Shown in pieces: positions 16,063 to 61,646 of a DNA stretch of 64,000 nucleotides. Origin of the DNA: Rebecca billardiae RCC1528. Lineage: Eukaryota; Protista; Haptophyta. Location of the stretch: positions 4,898,001 through 4,962,000 of the forward strand of contig OZ251222.1 in NCBI GenBank assembly GCA_965240325.2, written 5' to 3'. The position numbers and the translations under genes were made by a program. Positions within the stretch are counted from its first letter, which is position 1. Every line of letters starts with the position of its first letter. The notes beneath the pieces were generated by a model that saw only the letters and a program-made list of their open reading frames with translations, was not told the origin of the DNA and did not search any database.

Positions 16063-19000
16063 ATGGAGTACATGAGCTGGCTCCCAGGCGCAGCCGCAGC
16101 CGGGCCGCTCGCTCCCTTGGCGATGGATCGAGCTACTGCGCGATCTGCCAGCTGCAAGAGGCGAGCCACGAGCAGCCCTGACGACCGTGGTGCTCATCGC
16201 TCCCCCCACCCTGACGATACTCGTCGCGCTCCGCGCACAGGTAGGACGCCAGGCACGCGCCGACCGTGGTTGGCTCTGATGCTCGGGGCGCTCGCGCTCG
16301 CCGTCCGTCGCACCGAGGCGATTTCGACGGCCACGTGCACGGATCTGCGCACGCTCTACGGCCTGGGTGACTCATGGCAGCTCTCTTCCGCTGCAGGCTA
16401 CGAGCGTGTCTGCGGGGAAAGCCGCCACCCCTGGGGCACGGGCTTCAGCTCGTACGAGGCCATCACCAACTGGGACATCTGCCCCGCCTCCGTGTGGTTT
16501 GTGTGGCAGGACGCCAACACCGCGTGCACGGACATCGGCGCGCGGCTGTGCACGCAGGCTGAGATCGAGGCGGACGTCGCGGCAAACGGCGACGCGCAGT
16601 GCGGCTCGTACGACGGCACGCCGTGGGACCAGCACCGCTTCTGGACGAGCACGCAGTGCGGCAAGAACGCGGACAACCGGCGGCGCGTGCCGGGCGCATC
16701 CGCGTACGCCGCGGAGGGTGCGCAGTGCAAGAACGGCGCAAGCGGCGTCAACAACGCAGGCGTCAAGTGCTGCGCCGACGAGCCTGCGCCGCCACCCTCG
16801 CCACCAGCGCCCCCGCCAAGCCCGCCGAGCCCGCCGCCGAGCCCGCCGCCCTCGCCCGCGCCACCACCGAGCCCGCCTCCCTCGCCGGGGCCACCGCCGA
16901 GCCCTCCACCCTCGCCACCGCCGAGCCCACCTCCGTCACCGCCTCCATCGCCACCGCCAAGCCCGCCACCGCAGCCGCCGCTGTCGCCGCCGCCAGCCCC
17001 ACAGCCCTCGCCGCCACCAAGCCCGCCACCGTCACCGCCGCCTAGCCCGCCGCCCAGCCCGCCGCCCAGCCCGCCGCCTGCGCCGCCGCCCTCGCCGCCG
17101 CCGCCTGGCTCGCCGCCGAAGCCGCCGCCTTCGCCACCACCGTCGCCCCCCCCGAGCTCGCCGAGCCCCCCGCCGTCACCGCCGCAGGCGACGACGTCGT
17201 GCGCGACGTTGCAGGCGCTGTACGGCGGCTGGCCGCTCGCCTCCGACCCCGGCTTCGCGCTGGTGTGCGGCGAGAGTAACAACGGGCTCGACGGGTCGGG
17301 CGGCAGCCAGTGCTCGGGGCTGCGCGACCACAACTCTGCCATCCAGTTCTGCCAGCGCGTGAACTCCCGGTTGTGCACGTACCAGGAGCTGCTGGCCGAC
17401 GTGGCGGCGAACACGGGCTGCGACCTCGAGAACTCGCGCGTGTGGACCAACCAAGCATGCTCCAACGAGGCGGCGCCCGACGTGGACAACTTCTGGAGCG
17501 TGGGCGGCTCCAACTCGTCCACGCTGCCGCTGCGCTGCCGCACGTGGGACAAGACGTACAGCGTGCGTTGCTGCGCGGACGTGCTCGAGTCACCACCCCC
17601 ACCTCTGCCGCCGCCAAGTCCGCCACCGAGTCCACCACCAAGCCCTCCGCCACCGCGCCCGCCTCCGAGCCCGCCGCCGAGCCCGCCACCATCGCCGCCG
17701 CCGAGCCCGCCGCCGAGCCCTCCGCCGAGCCCGCCTCCCAGCCCGGCACCGCCGCCGAGCCCGCCGCCGAGCCCACCGCCCAGCCCGCCACCCAGCCCGC
17801 CGCCAAGCCCTCCGCCACCGCGCCCACCCCCGAGCCCGCCGCCGAGCCCGCCGCCATCGCCGCCGCCGCTCCCGCCGCCGTCACCACCCCCGCTGCCCCC
17901 GCCAAGCCCCCCGCCCGGCCCACCGCCCAGCCCGCCGCCCAGCCCGCCGCCTAGCCCGTCTCCTCCACGGCCGCCGCCGAGTCCGCCGCCCACACTGCCG
18001 CCGAGTCCACCACCAGCCCCCCCACCCAGGCCGCCCCCAAGCCCACCGCCGAGCCCGCCGCCAAGCCCACCGCCGCCATCTCCTCCGCCGTCGCCGCCCC
18101 CCTCCTCGCCACCGCTGCCACCGCCTTCGCCGCCACCATCATCGCCACCCTCGCCGCCGCCATCACCCCCACCGTCGCCGCCACCTTCACCACCCCCGTC
18201 GCCGCCACCTTCGCCGCCACCTGTCGCCTCGCCACTCCCACCGCCTGCCCTGCCACCTCAGCCGCCGCCACGCCCGCCACCGAGTCCCCCGCCGAGCCCA
18301 CCGCCAAAGCCGCCTCCAAGCCCGCCCCCGAGCCCACCGCCGAGCCCTCCCCCGCCGTTTCCGCCGCCGTCGCCCCCGCCGTCGCCCCCACCGTCGCCGC
18401 CACCATCACCACCACCATCGCCACCACCGTCGCCACCGCCATCGCCGCCGCCGGCAGAGAGCCCAGCCCCACCACCGTCGACGCCGCCGCTCCCACCACC
18501 AAGGCCACCGCCAAGTCCGCCTCCAAGCCCACCTCCAAGACCCCCACCAAGCCCACCGCCGAGCCCTCCTCCGCCAGCGCCGCCACCGTCACCGCCGCCG
18601 TCACAGCCGCCGTCACCACCGCCATCGCCACCACCGAGCCCGCCACCGTCGTCACCTCCCTCTCCGCCGCCATCGCCGCCGCCTGCACTGAGCCCTCGCC
18701 CACCGCCATCACCACCGCCTAGCGCGCCGCCAAGGCCTCCACCCAGCCCACCGCCGAGCCCGCCGCCAAGCCCGCCGCTGTCACCACCACCAAGCCCGCC
18801 GCCGAGCCCACCACCGCCCAGACCACCGCCGTCACCGCCACCGTCACCGCCGCCTTCGCCACCGCCATCGCCGCCGCCTGCCTTGGCCCCACGCCCGCCG
18901 CCTTCGCCGCCCCCGAGTCTTCCGCCACAGCCACCGCCGAGCCCACCGCCGAGCCCACCGCCACAGCCACCGCCGATCCCGCCGCCACACCCACCGCCGA

Positions 19001-22000
19001 GCCCACCACCGAGCCCTCCGCCCCCGTCACCTCCGCCTTCGCCGCCGCCGTCGCCACCGCCGTCACCTCCACCCTCGCCGCCTCCGACGGGCGAGCCCCT
19101 CCCGCCGCCGTCACCACCACCGAGCCCACCGCCGAGCCCACCTCCGAGTCCTCCGCCCAGCCCGCCCCCGAGCCCGCCACCCCCAGCGCCCCCGCCATCA
19201 CCCCCGCCATCGCCACCTCCATCACCGCCACCGTCGCCGCCGCCAGCACCACCACCACCGCCGCGTGCCGCGCCGTTCCCACCGCCCTCGCCACCGAGCC
19301 CGCCCCCCGCTCCACCGCCAAGCCCCCCGCCTAGATCGCCGCCGGCCCCTCCGCCTTCGCCTCCACCGCAGCCGCCGCCGGTTCCACCGCCCAGCCCGCC
19401 TCCTCCGGTGCCGCCACCGTCACCCCCACCGACGCCACCGCCGTCACTGCCACCATCCACGCCACCGCTGCCACCGCCAAGCCCGCCGCCATTACCACCG
19501 CCCTCGCCGCCACCGTCGCCGCCGCCTTCGCCGCCACCATCGCCGCCGCCGAGCCCACCACCGTCGCCACCGCCGTCGCCACCACCGGTGGCCTCGCCAC
19601 TGCCGCCGCCCTCTCCGCCGCCTTTGCCGCCGCCGAGCCCGCCGCCCTCCCCACCGCCCTTGCCACCGCCCTCGCCGCCACCCTCACCGCCGCCATTGCC
19701 ACCGCCCTCGCCGCCACCAACGCCACCACCATCGCCACCACCTTCGGCATCGCCACTGCCCCCGCCGTCGCCGCCTCCGCAGCCAGCGCCGAGCCCGCCA
19801 CCGTCACCGCCGCCCTCGCCTCCACCGAGCCCACCGCCGCCAGTCCCACCGCCCTCGCCGCCGCCCTCGCCGCCTCCCAGCCCACCGCCGTCGCCACCGC
19901 CCGCACCCCCGCCGCCACCGAGGGCGCAGCCCTTCCCTCCGCCGAGTCCACCTGCGCCGCCGCCCAGCCCTCCGCCGAGCCAGCCGCCTCAGCCGCCGCC
20001 GAGCCCGCCACCGGCGTCACCGCCATCACCACCGCCCTCGCCACCGCCGAGTCCACCGCCGCCGGCGCCGCCGCCATCACCTCCGCCGTCACCTCCGCCG
20101 AGCCCGCCGCCGTCTCCACCGCTCTCCCCACCGCCGTCGCCGCTGCCTTCACCGCCGCCGAGCCCGCCTCCATCGCCACCACCTTCGCCACCGCCGTCGC
20201 CACCACCGGTGGCCTCGCCGCTGCCGCCACCGTCCCCGCCTCCGCAGCCACCGCCGAGCCCGCCACCGTCACCGCCGCCCTCGCCTCCACCGAGCCCACC
20301 GCCGCCAGTCCCACCGCCATCGCCGCCGCCCTTGCCACCTCCCAGCCCACCGCCTTCGCCACCGCCCGCACCCCCGCCACCACCGAGGGCGCAGCCCTTC
20401 CCGCCGCCGAGCCCACCTGCGCCGCCGCCAAGCCCTCCTCCGAGCCAGCCGCCTCTGCCGCCACCGAGCCCGCCACCGGCGTCACCTCCGCGCCCACCGC
20501 CCTCGCCACCACCGAGTCCACCGCCACCGGCGCCGCCGCCATCACCTCCGCCGCAGCCGCCGCCGAGCCCGCCACCGACGCAGCCGCCGTCTCCACCGCC
20601 CTCGCCGCCGCCTTCACCGCCGCCGAGCCCGCCTCCATCGCCACCGCCGTCGCCACCACCGTCGCCACCGCCGGCGGCCTCGCCGCTGCCGCCACCATCA
20701 CCGCCGCCTTCGCCGCCGCCGACCCCGCCGCCATCACCACCGCCCTCGCCGCCGCCCTCGCCGCCGCCATCGCTACCGCCCAGCCCCCCGCCGAGCCCGC
20801 CTCCATCGCCACCGCCGTCTCCACCACCGTCGCCACCGCCGGCGGCCTCGCCGCTGCCGCCACCATCACCGCCGCCTTCGCCGCCGCCGACCCCGCCGCC
20901 ATCACCACCGCCCTCGCCGCCGCCCTCGCCGCCGCCATCGCTACCGCCCAGCCCCCCGCCGAGCCCGCCTCCATCGCCACCGCCGTCTCCACCACCGTCG
21001 CCACCGCCGGCGGCCTCGCCGCTGCCTCCGCCATCCCCGCCGCCGTTGCCTCCGCCGAGCCCACCGCCATCGCTGCCACCCTTGCCGCCGCCTTCGCCGC
21101 CCCCGTCGCCACCGCCCAGCCCCCCGCCGAGCCCGCCTCCATCGCCACCGCCGTCTCCACCACCAGCGGCCTCGCCGTTGCCACCACCATCACCGCCTCC
21201 GCAGCCGCCGCCGGGCCCGCCGCCGTCACCGCCGCCCTCGCCTCCACCGAGCCCACCGCCGCCTGTCCCACCGCCCTCGCCGCCGCCCTCGCCGCCTCCC
21301 AGCCCACCGCCTTCGCCACCGCCCGCACCCCCGCCGCCGCCGAGGGCGCAGCCCTTCCCGCCGCCGAGCCCACCTGCGCCGCCGCCAAGCCCTCCGCCGA
21401 GCCAGCCACCTCTGCCGCCACCGAGCCCGCCACCGGCGTCACCTCCGCGTCCACCGCCCTCGCCACCACCGAGTCCACCGCCACCGGCGCCGCCGCCATC
21501 ACCTCCGCCGCAGCCGCCGCCGAGCCAGCCACCGACGCAGCCGCCGTCTCCACCGCCCTCGCCGCCGCCTTCACCGCCGCCGAGCCCGCCTCCATCGCCA
21601 CCGCCGTCGCCACCACCGTCGCCACCGCCGGCGGCCTCGCCGCTGCCGCCACCATCACCGCCGCCATGGCCGCCGCCGACCCCGCCGCCATCACCACCGC
21701 CCTCGCCGCCGCCCTCGCCGCCGCCATCGCTACCGCCCAGCCCCCCGCCGAGCCCGCCTCCATCGCCACCGCCGTCTCCACCACCGTCGCCACCGCCGGC
21801 GGCCTCGCCGCTGCCTCCGCCATCCCCGCCGCCGTTGCCTCCGCCGAGCCCACCGCCATCTCTGCCACCCTTGCCGCCGCCTTCGCCGCCCCCGTCGCCA
21901 CCGCCCAGCCCCCCGCCGAGCCCGCCTCCATCGCCACCGCCGTCTCCACCACCAGCGGCCTCGCCGTTGCCACCACCATCACCGCCTCCGCAGCCGCCGC

Positions 22001-25000
22001 CGGGCCCGCCGCCGTCACCGCCGCCCTCGCCTCCACCGAGCCCACCGCCGCCTGTCCCACCGCCCTCGCCGCCGCCCTCGCCGCCTCCCAGCCCACCGCC
22101 TTCGCCACCGCCCGCACCCCCGCCGCCGCCGAGGGCGCAGCCCTTCCCGCCGCCGAGCCCACCTGCGCCGCCGCCCAGCCCTCCGCCGAGCCAGCCACCT
22201 CTGCCGCCACCGAGCCCGCCACCGGCGTCACCTCCGCGTCCACCGCCCTCGCCACCACCGAGTCCACCGCCGCCAGCGCCGCCGCCATCACCTCCGCCGC
22301 AGCCGCCGCCGAGCCCGCCACCGACACAGCCGCCGTCTCCACCGCCCTCGCCGCCGCCTTCACCACCGCCGAGCCCGCCTCCTTCGCCACCGCCGTCTCC
22401 ACCACCATCGCCACCGCCGGCGGCCTCGCCGCTGCCGCCTCCATCACCGCCGCCAAGGCCGCCGCCGAGCCCACCGCCAGCACTGCCGCCCTCGCCGCCG
22501 CCATCGCCGCCGCCCAGCCCACCGCCGAGCCCGCCTCCGTCGCCACCGCCGTCGCCGCCACCGGCAGCCTCGCCGCTGCCACCGCCATCCCCGCCGCCGT
22601 CGCCTCCGCCGAGCCCACCGCCATCTCTGCCACCCTTGCCGCAGCCTTCGCCGCCCCCGTCGCCACCGCCCAGCCCGCCGCCGAGCCCGCCTCCTTCGCC
22701 ACCGCCGTCGCCACCACCGGCCTCGCCGCTGCCGCCGCCCTCTCCGCCGCCTTTGCCGCCGCCGAGCCCGCCGCCCTCACCACCGCCCTCGCAGCCGCCC
22801 TCGCCGCCGCCCTCACCACCACCCTCGCTGCCACCTCACCCGCCGCCCAGCCCACCACCCAGCCCGCCACCGTCGCCACCGCCATGGCCACCACCGGCGG
22901 CCTCGCCACTACCGCCGCCCTCTCCGCCGCCTGTGCCGCCGCCGAGCCCGCCGCCCTCGCCGCCGCCCTCGCCGCCGCCCTCGCCACCGCCCTTGTCGCC
23001 GCCTTTCCCGCCGCCGAGCCCGCCCCCGTCGCCACCGCCCTCGCCACCGCCGAGTCCACCGCCGCCGGTGCCGCCGCCGTCACCACCGCCCGTGCCGCCG
23101 CCCTCACCACCACCCTCGCCGCCACCCAGCCCACCGCCCAGCCCACCACCCAGCCCGCCACCGTCGCCACCACCATCGCCACCACCGGCGGCCTCGCCGC
23201 TGCCGCCGCCCTCTCCGCCGCCTGTGCCGCCGCCGAGCCCGCCGCCCTCGCCGCCGCCCTTGCCGCCGCCCTCGCCACCGCCCTTGTCGCCGCCTTTCCC
23301 GCCGCCGAGCCCGCCCCCGTCGCCACCGCCCTCGCCACCGCCGAGTCCACCGCCGCCGGTGCCGCCGCCGTCACCTCCGCCGCAGCCGCCGCCAAGCCCG
23401 CCACCAACTCAGCCGCCGTCCCCACCGCCGTCGCCGCCGCCTTCACCGCCCCCGAGCACGCCACCGTCGCCGCCGCCGTCACCGCCTCCGTCGCCACCAC
23501 CAGCTGCCTCGCCCCTGCCGCCACCGTCCCCGCCGCCGTTGCCACCACCTAGCCCGCCACCATCACCACCGCCCCTGCCGCCGCCCTCACCACCGCCCTC
23601 GCCGCCGCCCTCGCCGCCGCCCAGTCCACCGCCGAGCCCGCCTCCGTCGCCACCGCCGTCGCCACCACCGGCGGCCTCGCCACTGCCGCCGCCCTCTCCA
23701 CCGCCTTTGCCGCCGCCGAGCCCGCCGCCCTCTCCGCCGCCCTTGCCGCCGCCCTCGTCGCCACCCTCGCCGCCGCCCTTGCCACCGCCCTCGCCACCGC
23801 CCTTGTCGCCGCCTATCCCACCGCCGAGCCCGCCCCCGTCGCCACCGCCCTCGCCACCGCCGAGTCGACCGCCCCCGGTGCCGCCGCCGTCACCACCGCC
23901 CGTGCCGCCGCCCTCACCACCACCCTCGCCGCCACCTAGCCCGCCGCCCAGCCCACCACCCAGCCCGCCACCGTCGCCACCGCCATCGCCACCACCGGCG
24001 GCCTCGCCGCTGCCGCCGCCCTCTCCGCCGCCTTTGCCGCCGCCGAGCCCGCCGCCCTCTCCGCCGCCCTTGCCGCCGCCCTCGTCGCCACCCTCGCCGC
24101 CGCCCTTGCCACCGCCCTCGCCACCGCCCTTGTCGCCGCCTATCCCACCGCCGAGCCCGCCCCCGTCGCCACCGCCCTCGCCACCGCCGAGTCGACCGCC
24201 CCCGGTGCCGCCGCCGTCACCACCGCCCGTGCCGCCGCCCTCACCACCACCCTCGCCGCCACCTAGCCCGCCGCCCAGCCCACCACCCAGCCCGCCACCG
24301 TCGCCACCGCCATCGCCACCACCGGCGGCCTCGCCGCTGCCGCCGCCCTCTCCGCCGCCTTTGCCGCCGCCGAGCCCGCCGCCCTCTCCGCCGCCCTTGC
24401 CGCCGCCCTCGTCGCCACCCTCGCCGCCGCCCTTGCCACCGCCCTCGCCACCGCCCTTGTCGCCGCCTATCCCACCGCCGAGCCCGCCCCCGTCGCCACC
24501 GCCCTCGCCACCGCCGAGTCGACCGCCCCCGGTGCCGCCGCCGTCACCACCGCCCGTGCCGCCGCCCTCACCACCACCCTCGCCGCCACCTAGCCCGCCG
24601 CCCAGCCCACCACCCAGCCCGCCACCGTCGCCACTGCCATCGCCACCACCGGCGGCCTCGCCGCTGCCGCCGCCCTCTCCGCCGCCCTCGTCTCCGCCGA
24701 GCCCGCCGCCCTCTCCACCGCCCTCGCCGCCGCCCTCGCCGCCGCCCTCGCCGCCGCCCTCGCCGCCGCCCTCGCCGCCGCCCAGCCCAGTGCCTTGGCC
24801 ACCGCCCTCGCCGCCGCCCTCGCCACCACCCTCGCCGCCGCCCTCGCCGCCGCCCTCGCCGCCGCCCAGCCCCCTGCCCTCGCCACCACCATCGCCACCA
24901 CCTTCGCTGCCGCCCTCGCCGCCGCCCTTGCCACCGCCCTCGCCGCCACCCAGCCCACCGCCGAGCCCGCCGCCGTCGCCACCGCCCTCGCCACCGCCGG

Positions 25001-28000: not shown

Positions 28001-31000
28001 AGTCGCAGGTGGACTTCACCACAGACCCGCGCACGAACATCACGCTCTCGGTGCCGTCGTCGTGCGCCACGTTCAACGGCGTGAACCAGGTGACGATGGC
28101 GAGCGGCGCAACGTGCACTGCGCTCAATGTGACCGTCTTTGTCGACTCGTACCTCCTGAGCGGCTTCGTCGAGGTGCCTGTCGTGACGGCTGCGGGCGCG
28201 TCATTCGAGATCACGCTCGAGGACGACACGCTCGGGCTGATCGGCGCGTCCACCACGTTCCAGCGCACGGCCACGACGCCCTCGGCCACGCTGAGCGACG
28301 GCACGGCTGTCTCGCCCGCGCTGCTGGCTGCAGAGATGGTGCTGGCTTCGAACGACACGCTCGTCGCAACCACGTCCGGCAGCACTGTCATCGGCGTGGG
28401 CGCGGGCGTTGCGCTCATCAACGCGACGTGGGGCACGCTCACAGCGTCAGCCACCGTCTACGTCGACGCGACCGCGGTGAAGGTGACGGCGCTGACGCTG
28501 GGCCTGGGCGGCTTGACGGCAGGCGCGTCGCTGCTGGCCATCAACGGCACGTCGAGCACGCTGAGCGCGCTCGTCACGCTCGAGGACGGCGTGCAGTACA
28601 CCAACCTGATGTCGCTGGGGTACGTGAGCGTGTCAGAGGTGCTCAGCTTTGAGAGCGACGACGCGGCCGTGCTCGGCGTCGACCCGAACGGCGTGGTGAC
28701 GATCGGTGGCAACAGCCGCGACGCGTCGAACACGATCACAGCTACGTCGCGCGACGCCGGTTCGGTGGCTGACGCCCTTGAAGTGGTGGCGAACCTGCAG
28801 CCTGGCACGCACGACGTGGACCTCGGCTCAGCGAGCGGACTGCAGCTCCAGCAGTCGGGCAACTCGCTGACGGTGCCCGTGCGCGTAAACACGGGTGGCG
28901 GCTCGGAGTACCTGGTCAACTTCCAGATCGAGCTGGCCATCGACAGCGCTGTCCTGGTCGCGACGTCGTGCAGCACGCTCTCGTGGGCCGAGTGCACGAT
29001 CAACGATCCGCTGAACGAGGTCAGGTTTGTGGGCAACACGGCATCGCAGATCACCAGCGGCACTGCCGCCTCGATCGGCTCCGTCACGTTCGACGTGCTG
29101 TCCTCGGCGAGCACGTCGCTGACGGGAAGCATCGTGGAGCTCGTGACCGTGCAGGGCGCGACAGAGACTCGCGTGCAGAACGCCGACATCTTTGCGGGCG
29201 CCGGCGGCCTCACGACGACCGTCAGCCGCCGGCGCGCGCTCGCGCTGGCCGCTGAGTACGTGCCGCCCCTGTTTGTGCCGACCGAGTCGAGCCAGGCGGC
29301 GCGCGCGCGGCGGCTGGCGGAGTGCTCGGGATGCTCCGCTGCCATCGTCGGCGACGTGAATGGCGACTGTGCCCTGACCTCATTCGACGTGCGCGTGCTA
29401 TCGCAGTTCGTCATCGGCGTGTCCGGGCTGACGACGTGCGTGTCCGCGCTCGACCCGACGCTGGACAACAGCACGGGTGCGCAGGACGTGCAGTACCTGC
29501 TGCGCGCGGTCGCGGGCAAGTACCGCTTCCTGACGAGCTACAGCATCACGTCGGGCGCCATCGGCGTCGGCACGAGTGACCCGCTCGTGGTGTCCGTCGT
29601 CGTGACGAAGGACGACAACACAGTCGCCGACGACAGCCAGACGAGCGTCTTCTTCGAGATCGGCGCGGCCGCTGCGTCGTACACGCCAGTGTACGTGAAC
29701 GGCACCGACAACGGCACGTCGGCCGAGGGCTACTGGGTGGGGCGTGGCGAGTATGCCAACGGCGTGTTCACACTGGGCGTGTACCCGAGCGGCGGGTGGC
29801 CACAGGCGCTCAGCGGGTCGTTGGGCGTTGCTGTGATGATCGAGACGACGGACGCGCTGGGCAACGGCGCGGATGACCGCAAGTTCCCGTTCCTCGGCTC
29901 GTCCGCGCAGTTCTACGCCGACTTCTTGTACCTGTTCGATCCGCTGCTCTCGACGGCGGTGATCGGGCCGCCACTGCCACCGCCACCGCTGCCGCCGCCG
30001 TCACCGCCGCCTCCGGCGCCACCGCCGAGCCCGCCGCCTCCGGCGCCACCGCCCATCCCGCCACCTCAGCCACCACCGTCGCCGCCGCCTTCACCGCCGC
30101 CATCACCGCCGCCATCACCGCCGCCGCTGCCTCCGGTGCCGCCCCCTTCCCCGCCGCCACTGCCCCCGCCATCTCCTCCGCCATCCCCGCCGCCGTCGCC
30201 TCCCCCTGCCCCAGCTCCTCCGCCCAGCCCACCGCCCACACCGCCACCGTCCCCGCCGCCGCAGCCGACGCCACCTCCGTCCCCGCCGCCTGCCCCGCCG
30301 CCCAGCCCGCCGCCGTCGCATCCGCCATCGCCGCCGCCGTCGTCGCCGCCGTCTCCACCACCATCGCCGCCGCCGCGCCAGCCGCCCAGCCCACCGCCGA
30401 GCCCACCGCCGTCGCCACCACCGGCGCCCTCGCCGCTGCCACCACCATCTCCACCGCCCTCTCCACCGCCGAGTCCGCCGCCATCCCCACCGCCCTCACC
30501 GCCCCCCTTGCAGCCGCCCTCACCACCGCCTTCGCCGCCGCCGAGCCCCCCTCCGTCGCCACCGCCGTCGCCCCCACCGGTGCCGCGGCCGCCACCAAGC
30601 CCGCCGCCATCACCACCGCCCTCAAAGCCACCCTCGCCGCCGCCATCGCCGCCGCCAAGCCCTTCTCCGTCGCCGCCGCCATCCCCACCACCACGGCCGC
30701 CGCCGAGTCCGCCGCCAGCACCACCGCCCTCGCCTCCGCCCTCGCTGCCGCCCTTGCCACCGCCCTCGCCGCCGCCAAGCCCACCTCCGTCACCGCCGCC
30801 ATCGCCACCACCTGCGGCATCGCCGCTGCCTCCGCCTTCCCCACCGCCGCGGCCGCCGCCGAGTCCGCCGCCATCACCACCGCCCTCGCCGCCGCCATCG
30901 CCGCCGCCCTCGCCGCCACCCTCGCCATCGCCCAGCCCGCCCCCGAGCCCGCCTCCGACGCCACCGCCATCGCCGCCACCGGCGGCCTCGCCGCAGCCAC

Positions 31001-55000: not shown

Positions 55001-58000
55001 CAACACCGCCGCCCTCTCCGCCGCCGTACCCACCGCCGAGTCCACCGCCGCCAGCGCCACCACCCTCGCCGCCCCCAACGCTGCCGCCCTCGCCGCCGCC
55101 GGCTCCGCCGCCGAGCCCACCGCCGTCGCCGCCCCCGGCGACGCCGTCGCCGCCGCCGTCGCCGCCACCTGCACCGCCGCCGACACCACCGCCCAGCCCA
55201 CCACCGTCGCCGCCGCCCAGCCCTCCTCTGCCACCGCCATCGCCACCGCCCAGCCCGCCACCACCGCTGCCGCCACCCACGCCGCCGCCCTCGCCGCCGC
55301 CAAGCCCGCCACCGAGCCCGCCGCCCGCGCCACCACCGCCACCGCGCGGCCTGCCGTTCCCGCCGCCCAGCCCGCCCGCGCCGCCGCCCAGCCCGCCTCC
55401 TGGCGCGCCGCCCAGCCCGCCGCCACTGCCACCGCCGTCGCCACCACCTGCGCCGCCACCGTCGCCTCCGCCGGGCCCACCCCCGCCAGGGCCGCCTCCA
55501 TCGCCACCGCCGGCACTGCCGCCCTCCGCCGCCCCTGCCACCCCCTTCGCCGCCCCCATCGCCGCCGCCCTCATCGCCACCGTCCCCGCCACCCTCGCCT
55601 CCGCCGAGGCCGCCACCGCCGCTGCCCTTGCCGCCCCCGTCACCACCGCCCGCATTGCCACCAGCGCTTCCGCTGTCGCCGCCGCCGACTCAGCCCCCAT
55701 CTCCGCCGCCGGCTCCACCGCCGAGCCCGCCGCCCTCGCCACCCCCGGCGACGCCGTCGCCACCGCCCTCGCCGCCACCTGCACCGCCGCCGACACCACC
55801 GCCCGGCCCACCGCCCTCGCCGCCTCCGAGCCCACCGCTGCCCCGCCGTCGCTGCCGCCGAGCCCGCCGCCAAGTCTGCCGCCCTCGCCACCGCCTTCAC
55901 CACCACCGCACGCGTCGCCACCGGCGCCACCGCCATCGCCACCGCCGACTGTCCCACCGTCGCCACCGCCATCACCGCCACCATCCCCGCCGCCGCCTCC
56001 GCGCGCCGAGCCACTCCCGCCGCCTAGCCCGCCGGCGCCGCCGCCGAGCCCGCTGCCATCCTCGCCTCCAAGTCCGCCGCCACGCCCGCCCCCTGCGCCT
56101 CCGCCCTCGCCTCCGCCGTCGCCACCGCCGTCGCCGCCTCCGCCGATTCCGCTGCTGCCACCGTCTCCACCGCCGGCGCCTCCCCCGACGCCCCCGCCGC
56201 TCCAGCCGCCCGCCCCGCCACCGTCGCCCCCACCAGAGGCGCCGTCACCGCCACCGTCGCCGCCACCGACTCCGCCACCGAGCCCGCCACCATCGCCACC
56301 GCCATCGCCACCGCCGGCCCCGCCCGCGCCTCCGCCGTCACCACCACCGAGCCCGCCCCCGCCGGGGGTGCCGCCCGCGCTGCCACCGTCGCCGCCGCCG
56401 AGCCCGCCGCCGTCGCCACCACCAGCTCCGCCGCCTCCGCCACGGGCGCAGCCGTTCCCACCGCCCAGCCCACCTGAGCCGCCGCCGAGCCCGCCACCGG
56501 CGCCCCCGCCATCGCCCCCGCCGTCGCCCACGCCTGCGCCGCCACCGAGCCCACTGCCACCTCCCAGCCCGCCACCGAGCCCGCCGCCGAGCCCACCGTT
56601 CCCACCGCCGTCGCCCCCGCCCAGCCCGCCGCCACGTCTGCAGCCGTCGCCTCCGCCGGCCCCGCCGCCGTCGCCTCCACCCGCGCCCCCGCCGAGCCCT
56701 CCGCCTCCGAGGCCGCCACCTGTGCCGCCGCCGAGCCCGCCGCCGTTGCACCCGCCGCCCTCGTCTCCACCGGCCGAGCCTCCCGCCCTGCCGCCGTCGC
56801 CTCCGCCGAGCCCGCCACCGCTCCCGCCACCCGCGCCGCCGCCGGCCCCGCCACCGCTTTCCCCGCCAGCGCCCCCGCCCAGCCCTCCGCCATCGCCCCC
56901 ATCCGGGGTGCCTCTGCCGCCGCCGTCGCCCCCGCCGACACAGCCGCCCCAACCGCCGCCCAGCCCGCCGCCCAGCCCGCCGCCGCCGGGGCCGACTCCG
57001 CCCCCGTCGCCGCCGCCGAGCGCGCCGCCCCAGCAGCCCCCGGCCCCGCCGCCGGCCCTGCCGCCGAGTGTGCCGCCGACAGCGCCGCCGCCAGCGCCAC
57101 CGCCGTCGCCGCCGCCGCGTCCGCCACCATCTTCGCCACCCACGCCGCCGCCGCCGCCGCGAGCGCAGCCGTTCCCGCCGCCGAGCCCGCCGAGCCAGCC
57201 GCCATCGCCGCCGCCAAGCCTGCCTCCGACGCCACCGCCGTCGCCACCGCCCAGCCCTCCACCGGCGCCGCCGCCGAGCCCGCCGCCGCATGCGCCGCCG
57301 CCGGCGCCGCCGCCAGCGTCACCGCCATCGCCGCCGCCCGCGCCACCACCGGCCCCGCCGCCCTCACCGCCACCTGAGTCGCCGCTGCCTCCGCCGTCAC
57401 CCCCGCCGAGCCTGCCTCCACGCCCGCCGCCGAGCCCGCCGCCGCGCGAGCCGCCCCGTCCACCACCGTCGCCGCCGCCCGGAGCGTCTCTGCAGCCCTC
57501 GCCACCGCCGAGCCCGCCGCCCTCGCCGCCGCCGAGCCCGCCGCCCTCGCCGCCGCCGCGCGGACCGAGCCCGCCGCCCTCGCCGCCGCCGAGCCCGCCG
57601 CCAGCGCAGCTGTCGCCGCCCCCGCCCTTGCCGCCCAGCCCGGCTGCGCCGAGCCTGCCGCCCTCGCCGCCGCCCTCGCCGCCGCCCCTGGCCCCGCCCT
57701 CGTCGCCGCCCTCGCCTCCACCGCCTCCGCGTGCGCTGCCCTTCCCGCCGCCCAGCCCGCCCGCGCCGCCGCCCAGCCCGCCCCCGACGCCGCCGCCGAG
57801 CCCCACGCCGCGCTCGCCGCCGCCGTCCAGGCCGCCGAGCGCCCCGCCCGGGCTGCCGCCTTCGCCGCCGCCCTCGCCGCCGCCGGCTCGGCCACCACCG
57901 CGCCCGCCGAGCCCGCCGCCGCCGCCGCCGCCGCTGCCGCCGCCGCCGCCTCGCGCAGAGCCGTTCCCGCCGCCCAGCCCGCCGTCGCCACCGCCGAGCC

Positions 58001-59744
58001 CGCCGCCTTCGCAGCCGCCTTCGCCGCCGCCCAGCCCGCCGCCCAGCCCGCCCAGCCCGCCGCCCTCGCCGCCCCCCTCGCCGCCGCCCAGCCCGCCGCC
58101 GCCCTCGCCGCCGCCCCCTCCGCCCAAGCGCTGCGCCTCGCGCGTGTGCATGTACGTGTTTGACGGCTACCTGAGCGGCTGCACCGTCTTCCTCGACGTC
58201 GACGGGGACGGGGCGGCCGGGCCGGGGGAGCCGAGCGCCGTGACGGGCGCGGACGGCTTCTTCGCCTTCGACGACGCGTCGCTGCCGCCCAACGCGCCGT
58301 TCAGCGCGCTCGACGTCGTGCTCATCCCCGGGCCGGGCTGCGTGGACGTGGACACGGGCTCGGAGCAGGTCGTGCCGCTGCGCGCCGCCGCGTCGCAGGC
58401 CGTGCTCTCGCCGCTGAGCACGCTCTCGCGCGCGCTCGCCGCCGCGTCGGGCCAGCCCAACGCGACGTTCGAGTCGGAGCTGCTCGCCGCGCTCGACCTG
58501 CCCGACCTCAGCGGCCGCCTGTCCGACTTCGACCCCTACTTTGCGCTGCAGGTGCGGGGGGCACGGGCGCGCGGCCGCGCGCGCGGCCGCGCGCGCCGCT
58601 GGGCTGCGCGCATCGGGCCTCGCGCGCGCGCTGGCTGAGCCGCCTGCCCGCCCCGCCGCCGGCCCCGATGGCCGCCCCCGGCTGCGCCCCGCCTCTCTCG
58701 CCCCGCAGACGGGCGTGAGCTCGCAGGTGAGCCGCTCCTCGCGGATGGTGGCGCGCGTGCTGCAGGTCAACTCGCTCGTCTCGCAGCTGGCCACGTTTGT
58801 GGCGGCCGCGTACGCGAGCGGAGGCACGGGCGCGGCCGAGGGCGTGGAGAGCGTGGGGCGGCGCGCGTTCAACCGGCTGGCCCTCGAGCTCGTGCCGCTG
58901 GGCGCGCCCGCCGACGGCAGCAGCCCGAACGCGAGCAGCACCGCGCCCACGCCCACGCCCGGCGCCCTGAGCGCGCGCACCACGCACCAGTCGCTCGTGG
59001 ACTACCTGTTGCCAGAGGCGGCCGCGGGCGGGCAGCTGGGCGAGCGCTCGGCCTCGCTGCTGAGCGTGCTCAACCTCACGATCGACGCGCTCGAGCGCGT
59101 GGGCAGCGCGGTGCGCGCAAGCCCACGCGGCGTGCCGCCCGCCGCGCCGCGCGTCGCCCCGTGCGCGCCCTCGGCACCGCGTGCTGAGCGCTGCTGCCGC
59201 GCGCGCGCCCCGACCGCCGCGCCGCCCGCGCGCGCCCACGCGCGAGCAGGGCCGCGTCACGCAGCGCACGCCGTCGCAAGTGTCCGCCTCGCTGCGCGCC
59301 GCGTCGCAGCTCGTGCGCAACGCGATCACGCCGGCCGCGCGCGAGCTCGGCAACCTGAGCACCTCCGCGCTGCCCAGCGCCACCCTCGCCGCCGTCGCAT
59401 CCCGCGCGGCCGAGATCGACGGCATCGCCGCGACGCTGGCCACGCCAAACTCGCCGCCGCCGAGCCCGCCGTCGCCGCCGCCGAGCCCGCCGCCCGCGCA
59501 GCCGCCGCCCCCGCCCGCGCCGCCCGCCGAGGTGGTCGACGCGGGCGGGCTCACCAGCGCCGTCAGCGTCGCGCCCCCGTCCTTCTTCTCCGACCGCCCG
59601 CTGCTGGGCGTGCTCGCGGTGAGCGCGGCCGTGCTGCTGTGCGCGTGCCTCGGCCTCGGCTGCCTGGCCGCGCTCGGCGCGCGGCGGAAGCGGCGCACTG
59701 AGCGGAGCAAGGTGGGCGCGGAGGTGGGCGCAGCCAGGCCGACG

Positions 59745-59775
<31 letters not shown>

Positions 59776-61646
59776 GCGAGGCCGCGCGCGACGTGAGCGC
59801 GCTCCCCGCCCTGGAGCCGGCCGAGCGCGCCTCGTACGGCGCAAGCCTCGGGCCCGCACCCGCACCGGCTGCGGGCGCGGGCGCGGGCGCGGGCGTGGAC
59901 GTGCTCGTGGTGCGGGATGGGCCGCCCGCCGCGCAGGACGACGACGCGCTGGCGGATGCGGCGGTGCAGACGTCTCCCGACCAGCGCGCGAGGTCGGGCC
60001 CCACGCCCTCCGCCGCGGCGCGCGTGCCGAGCACAGCCGACGGCGCGACGTCGCCGCGCGCGCCCGGCGGCGCGCCGCGCGCCCTGTCGCGCGCGAGCAG
60101 CCTGGCCTCGTCGCTGCTCAGCCCGCGCGCGCGCCCGCCCAGGATCGAGCCGGAGGGGTCGGAGGAGGCGGAGGGCGAGACGGCCGCCGACGCGTCCGCG
60201 CTTGGCGCGCCCGCGCCGGCCGACGAAGAGCGCGGCGCGGGCGGCGCGCCGAGCGCGGCCGCGGCCGGCGGCGCCGCGCCTTCGCGCGCGCGCTCAAAGG
60301 GCGCCGCTCTGCGTGCCGTGATGGCGGCGCTCTACCCGTCCAGCGACGAGAGCGAGGAGGAGGGGGAGGGCGAGGAGGAGGGCGCGGCGCCCGCGCGCGC
60401 GTCCGCCGGGAGCGCCGGCGCGCGGACCGACGAGAGGCCCGAGGACGGCAGCGGCGCGCAGCCAGCGCGCGCGCCGCCCGGCGCGCAGAGCCCGCCGCCT
60501 GCGGCCGACTCTCTGCGCGCGTCGGAGTGGGGCCAGTGGCGGCGGCACCGCACCAGCCCGGGCGCGATCGCGCGGCGCGCGCCGCACGCGACGACGGTGC
60601 GCGTGCCCATGCGCCCGCCCGTGCCGCGCGCCTCCGCCGTGCCGATCGAGCCCGAGGGCGAGAGCTGGGCCGACGCGGCGGCGGGGTGCGGCGCGCTGCC
60701 CTCGCCCTCAGCGCACGTCGCCGCCGCGATGCGCGCCGCGGCGCGCGCGCCGCGGCCGCCGAGCGCGCCGGCCATGCCCGGCGTGCGCGCAGCGTCGAGC
60801 GCGCCGCGGCTCGGCGCGGGGCTCGGCTCCGGCGCCATGTCCGCGCGGCCGAGCCGCGCCGCGCGCCCCGGGCAGGTGGTGCCTCTCTCGACGCAGCCGC
60901 TGATCCGGCCGAGCGCGCGCGCCTCGCGCGTGGCGAGCGCGCTGCAGCTCGCGGCCGAGGAGACGCGCGGGCTGCCCGGCGCGTGGGCGGGCACGCCGCC
61001 GCCGATGTCCGCCGCGGCGGGCGCGGCGCCGATCACGCTCAGCCCACCGCAGCAGCTGCCGCGCGTGATCAGCCGCGCCGGCCCGCGCGTCGAGCTCGGC
61101 AGCGGCGGCGGCGTCGCCATCGGCGTGGACGGCAGCCCGGCCGCGACGCTGCCCGCCGCCGTGCGCGTGCGCGTGCCGATGCGCCACGTGCCGATGCGCC
61201 CGCCCAGCTCGGGCCCGCGCCGGGCGGCGGTGCCCATCACGCCCACCTCGCCACACGACGAGGCGCGCGCGGCCGGCGGCTCGCTGCCGCCCGCGCACGC
61301 AGGCGCCGCCGGCGCGTCCGTGCCTCGGCTGGACCTGCGGCCCTCGCAGCGCGCCGTGCTCGCGCAGGGCGCCGTGCAGCGCATCGCCGTGTACGGCGCG
61401 CGGCAGTACGACTCGCTGCCCTCGCTCTCGAGCGGCGGGGCCGTGCGTCCGATGGCGGGGCCGCCCGCGCTCGCGAGCGCCGGGCGCGCGCCGCTGCCGC
61501 GCGCGACCTCTGGCCTCGGCGCCGGCGCTGGCGGCAGCAGCCTGCCCCCGGCGCACGACGCGCGCACGGCCCGGAGCGACCCGCAGTCGGGCGGCACGCG
61601 CACCGTCGCCTCGCCGCCCCCAGCCGACGGCGGAAGCGAGCAGTAG
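16063..61646 (+). CDS. Giant (~15,100 aa) predicted type-I membrane, extensin-like (Ser-Pro) protein with TMEM132-like cohesin/Ig region and dockerin. Exons ~16063-58551, 58709-59110, 59250-61646
   Basis: Uninterrupted ORF 15985-58638; the first ATG is at 16063, with alternatives at 16072, 16123 and 16279. Signal-like segment WLALMLGALALAVRRTEA. Phase-0 GT-AG introns 58552-58708 and 59111-59249 join the downstream ORFs. TM helix LLGVLAVSAAVLLCACLGLGCLAAL is followed by ARRKRR. Confidence 0.85.
16327..17589 (+). other. Two homologous Cys-rich extracellular modules (~16327-16782 and ~17191-17589) separated by a Ser-Pro linker
   Basis: Both share TCxxLxxLYG..W.L.S..G...VCGES, A...C....RLCT..E..ADVAAN, C, WT...C and CCAD; loosely C-type-lectin-like. 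Confidence 0.75.
17590..25780 (+). repeat. Coding Ser-Pro repeat block 1 (~2,730 aa), including 327-bp tandem units near 23.6-24.7 kb
   Basis: (SPPP)n translation. The 327-bp period is visible in the repeated shadow ORFs at 23936, 24263 and 24590. Confidence 0.95.
25781..29965 (+). other. Globular core (~1,400 aa): cohesin-like 1 (~26400-26830), TMEM132-like Ig/BIG repeats, cohesin-like 2 (~28845-29200), basic cleavage-like sites, dockerin (~29350-29520), further beta domain
   Basis: Cohesin-like: AGDSFELVMYA...WQINIAYDSSVLSV and GNSLTVPVRVN...NFQIELAIDSAVL. TMEM132-like: PLRVWHP...IRFGHGTLFAIKG...C...FQ...DVT. BIG2-like: SNDTLVAT...GVGAGVALINAT. Dockerin: GDVNGDCALTSFD...LDPTLDNSTGAQDVQYLL. 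Confidence 0.75.
29966..58125 (+). repeat. Coding Ser-Pro repeat block 2 (~9,390 aa) with higher-order units (156-bp submodule; 777/897/993/1089/1245-bp and 825-bp units)
   Basis: Periods measured from the spacing of the RAQPF and RGLPF landmark codons. Confidence 0.95.
58126..58551 (+). other. Membrane-proximal module resembling bacterial surface-protein (SdrD-B/Cna-like) repeats with a DxDxDG loop
   Basis: VFDGYLSGCTVFLDVDGDGAAGPGEPSAVTGADGFFAF...GCVDVDTG...VLSPLSTL. Confidence 0.6.

What the first reader, a model, noticed from the sequence alone, without database searches (positions are those of the whole stretch)
16063..61646. A ~15,100-aa membrane-anchored polyproline filament encoded almost entirely by one 42.5-kb exon
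Seen: about 12,000 residues of Ser-Pro repeat in two blocks, globular modules at the tip, middle and base, and a single TM helix with a basic stop-transfer. Known: polyproline II rises ~0.31 nm per residue, SPn motifs are hydroxylated and glycosylated in extensins/pherophorins, and polyproline translation depends on eIF5A. Inference: if extended, the rods would be ~0.85 and ~2.9 micrometres long, giving a single-molecule tether on the scale of a microalgal cell. Possible roles include scale or hair anchoring, adhesion, and predator or virus defence.
Basis: partly seen in the sequence, partly recalled or inferred. Interest (0 to 1): 0.88.

Follow-up and report, generated by a model that had tools for sequence, protein, structure and literature searches.

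The report
Giant membrane-anchored Ser-Pro rod protein gene
This very GC-rich alga carries an intact gene, kept by selection, for a surface protein of about 15,000 residues, four fifths of it Ser-Pro-Pro-Pro repeat, which could stretch about 3.7 micrometres from the cell; whether it is made and how long the repeat really is remain untested.

Summary
One frame is open from 15985 to 58638 (14,217 codons) and holds 12,095 repeat residues (70% Pro, 18% Ser; 1,780 SPPP units).

An open frame alone proves nothing here, because all three forward frames of the main rod lack stops. Four other results show it codes for protein:
- SPPP is written by 143 different 12-mers, using both serine codon families.
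- Diverged repeat copies give dN/dS of 0.12-0.32.
- Hundreds of codon-sized length changes never shift the frame.
- Every non-repeat island has coding-type codon usage in the same frame.

Two short GT-AG introns, predicted but not shown by RNA, join a juxtamembrane segment, one membrane helix followed by RRKRR, and a 654-residue tail.

- Coding signal starts near 16279, not 16063, giving about 15,023 aa.
- The Ala-rich patch at 55,522-55,854 is repeat read out of frame.

The tip holds two C-type-lectin-fold modules. The middle is a TMEM132/coherin-type Ig-cohesin-dockerin-like module, and a 2,442-aa metagenomic relative has it on short Pro-rich linkers. The closest known systems are Chlamydomonas MST3 and TLP-4 glycofibrils.

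No sequencing runs were listed, so expression, array length, hydroxylation and function are untested. Earlier notes of this scan report at least eight other SPPP-rod giants elsewhere in this genome.

The parts
16279..16332 (+). Probable translation start (ATG 16279) and short hydrophobic signal-like segment.
   Evidence: Codon log-likelihood is +0.82 per codon from 16279, against -0.26 for 16063-16278. GC3 rises at about 16255. No signal-peptide predictor was available.
16333..16812 (+). Tip module 1: Cys-rich domain with a C-type-lectin-like fold (10 Cys).
   Evidence: AlphaFold2 on alignment A2 gave pLDDT 82.5 and pTM 0.80. 77 PDB chains scored Z>=5, and nearly all rows listed are CTLD folds. 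The top matches are the Bd2740 C-terminal domain (Z 9.4) and mannose receptor CRD-4 (Z 8.9). 44 sequence relatives were found.
16855..17184 (+). 110-residue SPPP linker between the two tip modules.
   Evidence: Translation; segment table.
17185..17604 (+). Tip module 2: paralogue of module 1 (10 Cys, 35% identity).
   Evidence: Alignment A2.
17605..25794 (+). Rod 1: 2,730 residues of degenerate SPPP repeat, about 0.85 micrometre as a PPII helix. It has no long higher-order repeat.
   Evidence: 70.3% Pro. 177 of 632 units depart from the 4-residue spacing, yet the frame is kept. Autocorrelation shows only the 12-nt period.
25795..30024 (+). Middle module of 1,410 aa, of TMEM132/coherin type. 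Sub-parts: Ig_TMEM132_4th at 26857-27150; cohesin fold at about 28807-29193; conserved RRR/RxRR basic sites at about 29227-29313; dockerin-like GDVNGDC segment at 29332-29514; C-terminal beta-sandwich.
   Evidence: Pfam PF16070 scored 38.9 bits against a cut-off of 27. The module is collinear with P0002 at 29% identity over 1,363 aa, E 4e-61. It matches tandem copies in Salpingoeca rosetta 'FAT3'. Cohesins fill the top structural matches at Z 9-10.7, but on a low-confidence model with pLDDT 49.8. Dockerin matches in the PDB are weak, E 0.65-0.7. The basic site and GDxNGDC are shared in alignment A3.
30025..55521 (+). Rod 2: about 8,500 residues of SPPP repeat (about 2.6 micrometres) built of higher-order repeats. 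Units of 259-415 aa run to about 49,880, with a 3,888-nt super-repeat. Six 275-370-aa units follow to 55,345.
   Evidence: Landmark motif spacing. Unit copies are 92-99.7% identical in DNA, with differences concentrated at third codon positions. dN/dS is 0.12-0.32. Autocorrelation.
55522..55854 (+). Ala-rich patch of about 110 aa. It is SPPP repeat read out of frame, between a 46-nt insertion (+1) and a 1-nt deletion in a C run.
   Evidence: The +1 frame of this stretch reads SPPP repeat. Alignment with the two preceding repeat units shows both indels.
55855..58119 (+). Rod 3: 755 residues of more degenerate Ser/Ala-Pro repeat, about 0.23 micrometre.
58120..58551 (+). Base module: 144 aa, 4 Cys, with a DVDGDG loop. 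Its family is unknown. It ends exon 1 at the donor CAG|GTGCGG.
   Evidence: GC3 is 0.979 in frame. No Pfam, PDB or informative Atlas match. Donor site.
58552..58708 (+). Predicted intron 1 (157 nt, GT..AG).
   Evidence: No codon periodicity. The reading frame changes across it. Read-through would stop at 58638.
58709..59110 (+). Predicted exon 2 (134 aa, juxtamembrane stalk).
   Evidence: GC3 is 0.978 and codon log-likelihood is +1.15 in this frame only.
59111..59249 (+). Predicted intron 2 (139 nt, GT..AG). An alternative in-frame acceptor lies at 59264/59265.
59250..59600 (+). Exon 3, extracellular part, with a short SPPP spacer just outside the membrane.
   Evidence: Codon log-likelihood is +0.89 in this frame and about -1.0 in the other two.
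59601..59681 (+). Single transmembrane helix, followed by RRKRR.
   Evidence: Hydropathy of 2.62 over 19 residues is the only strong peak in the protein. Translation.
59682..61646 (+). Predicted cytoplasmic tail of 654 aa, rich in Ala/Pro/Gly/Arg/Ser and low in complexity, plus the stop codon at 61644-61646.
   Evidence: Codon log-likelihood is +0.54 to +0.69 in the model frame and -0.8 to -1.0 in the other frames. No homologues and no Pfam match. It has 0 N-glycosylation sequons.

Best explanation
This is a real gene, maintained by selection, for a type I membrane protein of about 15,000 residues. It belongs to the hydroxyproline-rich-glycoprotein kind: a stalked surface adhesin or tether.

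From the far end to the membrane the predicted parts are:
1. a short signal-like segment;
2. two C-type-lectin-fold heads;
3. an SPPP rod of about 0.85 micrometre;
4. a 1,410-residue TMEM132/coherin-type Ig-cohesin-dockerin-like module;
5. about 2.9 micrometres of further SPPP rod, punctuated every 74-415 residues by a conserved P5-R-x-x-P-F-P3-S-P2 motif;
6. a small base domain and stalk;
7. one membrane helix;
8. a low-complexity cytoplasmic tail.

Shown here: the coding status, the domain folds and families, the predicted topology, and a short-stalked relative with the same layout.

Inferred from what is established for green-algal and plant HRGPs, for MST3 and for TLP-4: the rods form polyproline II helices, are hydroxylated and O-glycosylated, and hold the lectin-like heads up to micrometres from the membrane as a thin single-chain fibril. 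Such a fibril could serve as a fine surface or flagellar hair, or as an adhesion or capture tether. The punctuation motif may be a kink or a docking site. The conserved basic site between the cohesin and the dockerin-like segment may be a processing site.
For: Coding status:
- 1,780 SPPP units are written by 143 distinct 12-mers, using both TCN and AGY serine codons.
- Differences between repeat copies fall mainly at third codon positions, for example 6, 9 and 45 at positions 1, 2 and 3. dN/dS is 0.12-0.32.
- Rod 1 has 177 off-period units with no frame loss.
- The one frameshift is compensated 315 nt later.
- All islands score as coding in the one frame.

Anchor: the frames switch across two GT-AG spacers that lack periodicity, and a strong membrane helix with RRKRR follows.

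Ectodomain signs: Cys counts of 10, 10, 16 and 4, and 15 sequons outside against 0 in the tail.

Domains: CTLD fold; TMEM132 Ig; cohesin fold.

Relative: P0002 carries the same module between Pro-rich linkers of about 130 and 170 aa, then a membrane helix and a tail.

Punctuation motif: 35 copies in 15 DNA versions, with Arg written by five different codons.

Precedents:
- MST3 (8,572 aa) spans the mastigoneme as a single copy, and its 429-residue N-terminus forms a filament of about 140 nm (PMC11015965).
- TLP-4 is a single chain of tetrapeptide repeats rising 12.4 A per repeat and is more than 600 nm long (PMC11725842).
- A protein with Ser-Pro3-4 repeats was detected by proteomics in Emiliania huxleyi (PMC10290126).
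- Haptophytes have ExAD-like GT47 sequences (PMC5371791).
Against: - No RNA or DNA run could be listed, so transcription, splicing and array length are untested.
- Repeat units of 0.8-1.2 kb are up to 99.7% identical, so copy number could be misassembled. Every 1,001-mer is unique, however, and the longest exact repeat is 711 bp.
- The N-terminal signal segment is short and was not tested with a predictor, and the start codon is uncertain.
- The tail has no homologues and is low in complexity.
- The rods lack extensin Tyr cross-link motifs (6 Tyr).
- No hydroxylase or glycosyltransferase could be examined from this window.
- The cohesin-dockerin model is of low confidence.
- The roughly 700 irregular units and 35 punctuations may bend the rod, so its reach could be far below its contour length.
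Confidence: 0.6

Rival explanations
1. The gene is real but its length is an assembly artefact. The higher-order repeat array in rod 2 may have been expanded or collapsed during assembly, and the frame-shifted patch may reflect consensus errors. The true protein could then be substantially shorter or longer.
For: Repeat units of 0.8-1.2 kb are 92-99.7% identical. Only 42% of 31-mers and 61% of 101-mers are unique. One of the two compensating indels is a 1-nt change in a C homopolymer, a typical long-read error site. No reads could be obtained to check.
Against: All 1,001-mers are unique and the longest exact repeat is 711 bp. Super-repeat copies differ by 2-8%. Units of different length follow an irregular order. 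Reads of 10 kb or more could therefore place everything. Rod 1 (2,730 aa) has no higher-order repeat at all. The 46-nt insertion is not an error type.
Confidence: 0.15
2. The product is released rather than tethered. Either it is not spliced to the membrane exons and ends at 58638, or it is cut at the conserved basic site or near the membrane. It would then act as a secreted matrix, mucilage or scale-associated fibril rather than as a cell-bound tether.
For: Without intron 1 the frame stops at 58638, before the membrane helix. An RRR/RxRR site is conserved between the cohesin and the dockerin-like segment in haptophyte and choanoflagellate relatives. TLP-4 fibrils are found free in water.
Against: Exons 2 and 3 have a strong coding signal in the frames that the GT-AG sites predict. 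The relative P0002 has its membrane helix in the same open frame as the module. Cleavage is not shown.
Confidence: 0.15
3. The locus yields several products. Internal promoters, or large introns hidden within the rods, would give smaller proteins, such as a tip protein and a separate membrane-anchored middle-module protein.
For: Introns inside low-complexity rods cannot be recognised from sequence. The related P0002 is only 2,442 aa. No RNA data are available.
Against: The same frame is kept across 42.6 kb and across every rod-island boundary. A frameshift in rod 2 was compensated, which implies selection for reading through to the 3' end. Purifying selection acts on the repeat units themselves.
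Confidence: 0.08
4. The rods are a non-coding C-rich satellite that happens to lack stop codons, lying between unrelated small genes.
For: All three + frames of rod 2 and two of its - frames are almost free of stops.
Against: Both serine codon families are used and 143 different 12-mers write SPPP. dN/dS is 0.12-0.32. All length changes are multiples of three except one compensated pair. The punctuation motif is conserved at the amino-acid level with five Arg codons.
Confidence: 0.02

Closest known systems
Chlamydomonas reinhardtii MST3 (Mstax), the axial protein of the flagellar mastigoneme (PMC11015965)
   Same: Both are single giant polypeptides dominated by proline repeats. In MST3 these form glycosylated PPII helices spanning hundreds of nanometres. 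Both have the N-terminus at the far end, a membrane anchor at the C-terminal end, and a long intracellular tail. In MST3 the repeat number sets the filament length.
   Different: MST3 has 8,572 aa, with 42 repeats of P13...P11(XXP)3 and a PKD2-like multi-pass domain, and it is sheathed by MST1. This protein has about 15,000 aa, uses P3 runs (SPPP), has one membrane helix, and carries lectin-fold heads and a mid-shaft Ig-cohesin module. No sheath partner is known, and there is no sequence homology outside the low-complexity parts.
TLP-4 glycofibril from pond water (PMC11725842)
   Same: TLP-4 is a fibril whose only protein is one linear chain of tetrapeptide repeats with Ser/Thr next to Pro. 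It rises 12.4 A per repeat and is longer than 600 nm. The SPPP unit fits the SPxx pattern.
   Different: The sequence and source organism of TLP-4 are unknown. It carries 3,4-dihydroxyproline with very large glycans. Its paper searched for repeats of PTAA/PSAA/TPAA/SPAA type. Nothing links TLP-4 to this gene beyond the repeat pattern.
Plant extensins and green-algal HRGPs (GP1, sexual agglutinins, pherophorins)
   Same: They share Ser-Pro3-5 repeats predicted to form rods. In the algal cases the rods bear globular heads used for adhesion or wall assembly.
   Different: This protein has no Tyr cross-link motifs, no pherophorin domain and no detectable homology in its globular parts. It is 10-50 times longer than extensins, membrane-anchored, and found in a haptophyte-type alga. 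That agglutinins have a head-and-shaft form is partly from my own recall and partly from PMC2113723 (listed, title and abstract only).
TMEM132 proteins and choanoflagellate/sponge coherins (PMC6030884)
   Same: The middle module has a TMEM132 Ig domain above the Pfam cut-off, a cohesin-fold domain and Big_2-like features. It sits in a single-pass membrane protein and aligns over about 1,350 aa with tandem modules of Salpingoeca rosetta 'FAT3'.
   Different: Animal TMEM132 proteins have no detectable dockerin and no proline rods. The TMEM132 N- and C-terminal families were not detected here. The architecture was described as holozoan in origin, whereas this copy is in an alga.

Membership tests
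Extensin-type HRGP | Dominant Ser-Pro3-5 repeats | tested here: met
   1,780 SPPP units; 2,334 P3 runs; 70% Pro and 18% Ser over 12,095 residues.
Extensin-type HRGP | Tyr-based cross-linking motifs (YXY, VYK) | tested here: not met
   Only 6 Tyr and 4 Lys in 12,095 rod residues.
Extensin-type HRGP | Proline hydroxylation and Hyp-arabinosylation / Ser-galactosylation | not testable with these tools
   This needs chemistry. The only leads are ExAD-like GT47 sequences in haptophytes (PMC5371791) and an unchecked first-reader note of a P4H + GT77 + SPPP gene cluster elsewhere in this genome.
Extensin-type HRGP | N-terminal secretory signal | tested here: inconclusive
   A hydrophobic segment at 16279-16332 directly precedes CTLD1. 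It is short, and no predictor was available.
MST3/Mstax-type mastigoneme axis | Repeated P13...P11(XXP)3 units | tested here: not met
   Proline runs are mostly 3 long, and the longest is 8.
MST3/Mstax-type mastigoneme axis | PKD2-like multi-pass membrane domain | tested here: not met
   One hydrophobic helix only. No Pfam match in the C-terminal parts.
MST3/Mstax-type mastigoneme axis | Single polypeptide with a very long proline-repeat region, N-terminus distal, C-terminal membrane anchor and intracellular tail | tested here: met
   Met by prediction only.
TMEM132 / coherin module | TMEM132 Ig domain | tested here: met
   PF16070 scored 38.9 bits against a curated cut-off of 27, E 8.3e-10.
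TMEM132 / coherin module | Cohesin-fold domain | tested here: met
   Fifteen of the 16 best structural matches are cohesins, at Z 8.8-10.7 with 111-121 residues aligned. The model has pLDDT of only 49.8, so support is moderate. Relatives carry PF00963 in precomputed Pfam.
TMEM132 / coherin module | TMEM132 N-terminal and C-terminal conserved regions | tested here: not met
   No such Pfam families at E<=1.
Dockerin | Duplicated Ca-binding F-hand segment recognised by a dockerin profile | tested here: inconclusive
   A GDVNGDC motif is present, with weak PDB dockerin matches at E 0.65-0.7. There is no Pfam hit. Atlas feature leads were to Dockerin_1 clusters at 0.87. The region was modelled with low confidence.
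C-type lectin-like domain superfamily | CTLD fold | tested here: met
   The model has pLDDT 82.5. 77 chains scored Z>=5, and nearly all rows listed are CTLD folds. Foldseek hits were to FGE, Lcl-C and the mannose receptor.
C-type lectin-like domain superfamily | Canonical Ca/carbohydrate motifs (EPN/QPD and WND) and a Lectin_C profile match | tested here: not met
   No Pfam match. No such motifs appear among the conserved columns of A2. Ligand unknown.
TLP-4-type glycofibril | Linear chain of tetrapeptide repeats with Ser/Thr adjacent to Pro | tested here: met
   SPPP is the modal unit, and 4-residue spacing holds in 1,946 of 2,761 units.
TLP-4-type glycofibril | 3,4-dihydroxyproline bearing two glycans and an 8-nm glycan shell | not testable with these tools
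   Needs cryo-EM and chemistry.

The most novel reading that the evidence does not exclude
One polypeptide may itself be a micrometre-scale cell-surface or flagellar hair. It would be a single-chain glycofibril about 3.7 micrometres long with lectin-fold tips. It would have periodic docking or kink motifs. Mid-shaft, it would carry a furin-type cut bridged by a cohesin-dockerin clasp that works as a calcium-dependent breakaway joint. That would name the gene class behind the fine non-tubular hairs of pavlovophytes and behind orphan environmental glycofibrils of the TLP-4 kind.
Probability: 0.2. Interest if true: 0.85.

Novelty: new variant of a known kind. Interest (0 to 1): 0.62.

Why it matters
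If the protein is made as predicted, it would be among the largest proteins known. Its proline-repeat region (12,095 residues) is longer than the whole of MST3 (8,572 aa). It would also show that extensin-like rod chemistry is used outside green plants to build membrane-anchored, micrometre-long single-molecule tethers with exchangeable heads.

It offers a concrete gene for testing three things:
- how cells translate thousands of PPP runs;
- how rod length is set and evolves through gain and loss of higher-order repeats;
- what the fine surface hairs of haptophytes and the free glycofibrils in natural waters are made of.

It also places a TMEM132/coherin-type module, described as holozoan in origin, in an alga.

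Tried and rejected
Searches that gave nothing:
- A homologue search with exon 3 and the tail found nothing.
- An exact look-up of a neighbouring ORF found no record, and Pfam found nothing on seven flanking ORFs. I could not see how any public annotation treats the locus.
- The metagenome scan with the middle module found no relative. Alignments A3 and A2 were unsuitable as scan queries.
- The Atlas search on the base module was uninformative.
- Pfam and the PDB gave nothing for the base module, exon 2 or the tail.
- Rfam found nothing in the window.

Weak result: AlphaFold2 on the cohesin-dockerin part gave a low-confidence model. I used only its first beta-sandwich.

Ideas rejected:
- Openness of the frame as evidence. 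All three + frames of rod 2 are open.
- The Ala-rich patch as a globular module. It is repeat read out of frame.
- The suspicion that the tail is non-coding because GC2 exceeds GC3. The codon-usage likelihood test favours the model frame.
- Selective avoidance of G4/i-motif patterns. They are not avoided: 129 observed against 76 expected.
- The identity of the organism. Earlier notes call it a Diacronema-like pavlovophyte. I could not verify this from the window. Its GC content fits the 73% reported for D. lutheri (PMC8379373).

Full report
**Observation**

The window is very GC-rich: 62-75% outside the repeats and 80-85% with a GC skew of about -0.45 inside them. One + strand frame is open from 15985 to 58638, or 14,217 codons. 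Its translation has about 70% Pro and 18-19% Ser over two long blocks, interrupted by ordinary protein sequence at the start, the middle and the end.

The repeat parts add up to 12,095 residues:
- a 110-aa linker;
- rod 1, 2,730 aa;
- rod 2, 8,500 aa;
- rod 3, 755 aa.

They hold 8,455 Pro, 2,191 Ser, 1,780 exact SPPP units and 2,334 runs of exactly three prolines.

**Is it coding or just an open, stop-poor satellite?**

Openness is not evidence here. In rod 2 all three + frames have no stops, against about 39 expected from base composition, and two - frames have one each. Five other results are decisive.

1. SPPP is written by 143 different 12-mers. Serine uses both the TCN and AGY families, which cannot interconvert by one substitution without leaving serine.
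2. Same-length higher-order repeat units differ mainly at third codon positions, for example 6, 9 and 45 differences at positions 1, 2 and 3. Nei-Gojobori dN/dS between diverged units is 0.12-0.32, with dS up to 0.23.
3. Rod 1 has no long higher-order repeat. In it, 177 of 632 units depart from the 4-residue spacing, yet the frame is never lost.
4. The single frame shift in the rods is compensated. A 46-nt insertion (+1) is followed about 315 nt later by a 1-nt deletion in a C run. The stretch between them reads as an Ala-rich patch in the gene's frame and as SPPP repeat in the +1 frame. So this patch is not a globular island. The compensation argues that reading through to the 3' end matters, unless the 1-nt change is a consensus error.
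5. The CTLD modules, the middle module, the base, exon 2 and exon 3 all have GC3 of 0.88-0.98 and positive codon-usage log-likelihood in the assigned frames only.

**Gene model**

- Start: upstream of 16,250 there is about 1.8 kb without any coding periodicity, and an unrelated coding segment ends at 14,477. From ATG 16279 the score is +0.82 per codon. I therefore favour a start at 16279. It gives a short hydrophobic signal-like segment directly before the first module. This is not settled.
- Intron 1: the long frame would stop at 58638. At 58551/58552 there is a donor, CAG|GTGCGG, and at 58708/58709 an acceptor preceded by a pyrimidine-rich tract.
- Exon 2: the next 402 nt code strongly in another frame.
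- Intron 2: a second donor, GCG|GTGCGC, lies at 59110/59111 and an acceptor at 59249/59250, with an in-frame alternative at 59264/59265. These lead into the third frame. The two spacers (157 and 139 nt) show no periodicity.
- Exon 3 encodes a short SPPP spacer and the only strong hydrophobic helix of the protein (59601-59681, hydropathy 2.62). RRKRR follows, and then a 654-residue low-complexity tail runs to the stop at 61644-61646.
- Tail: it has GC2 above GC3, which made me doubt it. The codon-usage test clearly favours the model frame, at +0.54 to +0.69 against -0.8 to -1.0.
- Length: the model gives 15,095 aa from 16063, or about 15,023 aa from 16279.
- Topology: even Cys counts in the outer modules (10, 10, 16, 4), and 15 N-glycosylation sequons outside against none in the tail, fit a type I topology.
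- None of this is supported by RNA. Two searches for sequencing runs listed none, so read laying could not be used.

**Repeat anatomy and assembly risk**

- Rod 1 shows only the 12-nt period.
- Rod 2 is built of higher-order units marked by a landmark motif, P5-R-x-x-P-F-P3-S-P2. The motif occurs 35 times in the protein, at spacings of 74-415 residues.
- Up to about 49,880 the units are 259-415 aa long, with a 3,888-nt super-repeat. Six units of 275-370 aa follow.
- Copies are 92-99.7% identical in DNA.
- The landmark motif exists in 15 DNA versions, with Arg written by AGG, CGC, CGT, CGG and CGA. It is therefore conserved at the protein level.
- The longest exact repeat is 711 bp, 97% of 501-mers are unique and all 1,001-mers are unique. 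Accurate long reads could resolve the array, but I could not check that they did.
- The rods are basic: 139 Arg against 10 Glu and no Asp. They have no Cys, Met or Asp and only 6 Tyr, so extensin-type Tyr cross-linking is not expected.

**The modules: tip**

The two Cys-rich tip modules have no Pfam match. They have 44 relatives in an exhaustive profile-free search. The named relatives come from Salpingoeca urceolata and a picozoan, and the rest are metagenomic. In those relatives the domain gives sub-threshold matches to the Link, FGE and intimin lectin families.

AlphaFold2 on a 26-sequence alignment gave pLDDT 82.5. 77 PDB chains score Z>=5, and nearly all rows listed are C-type-lectin-like folds. 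They are led by the tip domain of a Bdellovibrio fibre (Z 9.4) and mannose receptor CRD-4 (Z 8.9). The canonical calcium and sugar-binding motifs are absent, so the ligand is open.

**The modules: middle**

The middle module (1,410 aa) has a TMEM132 Ig domain above the Pfam cut-off. It is collinear over 1,363 residues with P0002 (29% identity, E 4e-61). P0002 is a 2,442-aa protein on a 72% GC algal-type metagenome contig.

P0002 places the module between Pro-rich linkers of only about 130 and 170 residues, followed by a membrane helix and a tail. That short-stalked relative supports the reading that module, rod and anchor belong to one protein here. It also suggests that the rods are expanded linkers.

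The same module occurs two to three times in tandem in a 7,553-aa Salpingoeca rosetta protein with cadherin domains. This is the coherin/TMEM132 architecture of PMC6030884.

The C-terminal part of the module, in order:
- a cohesin-fold sandwich (Z 9-10.7 to many cohesins, on a low-confidence model);
- a basic RRR/RxRR site conserved in the haptophyte-type and choanoflagellate relatives;
- a GDVNGDC dockerin-like segment (weak PDB matches; Atlas leads);
- a further beta-sandwich.

The 144-aa base module and the stalk have no recognisable family.

**How it most likely works**

Shown: a selected coding sequence, the domain folds, a predicted type I topology, and a family relative with the same layout.

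Inferred from established HRGP biology and two recent structures:
- SPPP rods adopt polyproline II helices that are hydroxylated and O-glycosylated.
- Such single chains are stiff enough to form filaments. The 429-residue N-terminus of MST3 forms a filament of about 140 nm, and the whole 8,572-aa protein spans the mastigoneme of about 0.8 micrometre as a single copy that sets its length (PMC11015965).
- TLP-4 is an 8-nm glycofibril whose only protein is one chain of tetrapeptide repeats, rising 12.4 A per repeat (PMC11725842).

By analogy, this protein would present two lectin-fold heads on a thin fibril with a contour length of about 3.7 micrometres, anchored by one helix. Its reach is probably reduced by about 700 irregular units and 35 punctuation motifs. 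The punctuation motif may be a kink or a periodic docking site, as the MST3 repeats are for MST1. The conserved basic site between cohesin and dockerin-like segment could be a processing site that leaves the two halves joined by a clasp. Both ideas are untested.

Two papers show that haptophytes may have the chemistry. ExAD-like GT47 sequences are reported in them (PMC5371791). An expressed Ser-Pro3-4 protein was found in Emiliania huxleyi (PMC10290126).

**Comparison and novelty**

This works like MST3 and like algal HRGP adhesins, but it fails their membership tests. It has no P13/P11 repeats, no PKD2-like domain, no Tyr cross-link motifs and no pherophorin domain.

It is best called a new variant of a known kind: an HRGP-type rod protein with a new set of modules (CTLD heads, a TMEM132/coherin module, a single-pass anchor), a repeat region longer than the whole of MST3, and a haptophyte-type host. 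It is not the largest haptophyte protein. The PKZILLA polyketide synthases are described as massive, and from my own recall they are larger than this protein.

Earlier notes of this scan report at least eight other SPPP-rod giants with other heads and bases in the same genome, one of them with the same punctuation motif. The kind has therefore been found before in this scan on other DNA. I did not see those sequences.

**Limits**

- No expression data.
- No check of the assembly.
- No signal-peptide predictor.
- The organism name rests on earlier notes, not on my own tests.
- The searches for relatives of the middle module covered protein lengths of 776-2,469 and 5,500-17,500 aa only.

Noticed in passing
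window 30028-55500 (rod 2): Long C homopolymers are strongly avoided. There are 106 runs of five or more C, against 380 +/- 11 when synonymous codons are shuffled. CCC makes up only 11% of Pro codons, and CCA is enriched relative to the non-repeat module (26% against 15%). This may limit slippage frameshifts. The excess is inflated by copying of repeat units.
   Followed up: partly
window 61878-61998: Just past the stop codon the GC content drops to about 50%. A short 11-nt tandem array (AGTGTACCAAT, 6.9 copies) is preceded by 2.8 copies of its reverse complement. Other notes of the scan describe a TGTACCA array with insertions starting near here.
   Followed up: no
window 13900-14477 (+): A strongly coding-like segment (GC3 0.9-0.98) ends at the stop of the ORF 13503-14477. 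It has no Pfam match and no exact record in the protein collection. It is probably the last exon of an upstream gene, separated from the giant gene by about 1.8 kb without coding signal.
   Followed up: partly
window 29227-29313; P0047 and P0002 in alignment A3: An RRR/RxRR basic site between the cohesin fold and the dockerin-like segment is conserved between this alga, a metagenomic algal relative and both module copies of a Salpingoeca rosetta cadherin-type giant. This suggests an old proteolytic processing site in this module.
   Followed up: partly
P0003 (Salpingoeca urceolata), P0014 (Picozoa) and 42 other proteins: The Cys-rich tip domain defines an uncatalogued CTLD-fold family (conserved C..VCGES..GARLCT..VWTST.C..VRCCAD). 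In protists it is found in multi-domain proteins alongside HYR, EGF, TNFR, trypsin and M43 peptidase domains.
   Followed up: partly
window 8092-9288 (-) and 62076-63272 (-): Two ORFs of identical length (398 aa, GTG start, no Pfam match) flank the giant gene. Other notes place transposon-like elements at both spots. I did not compare them.
   Followed up: no
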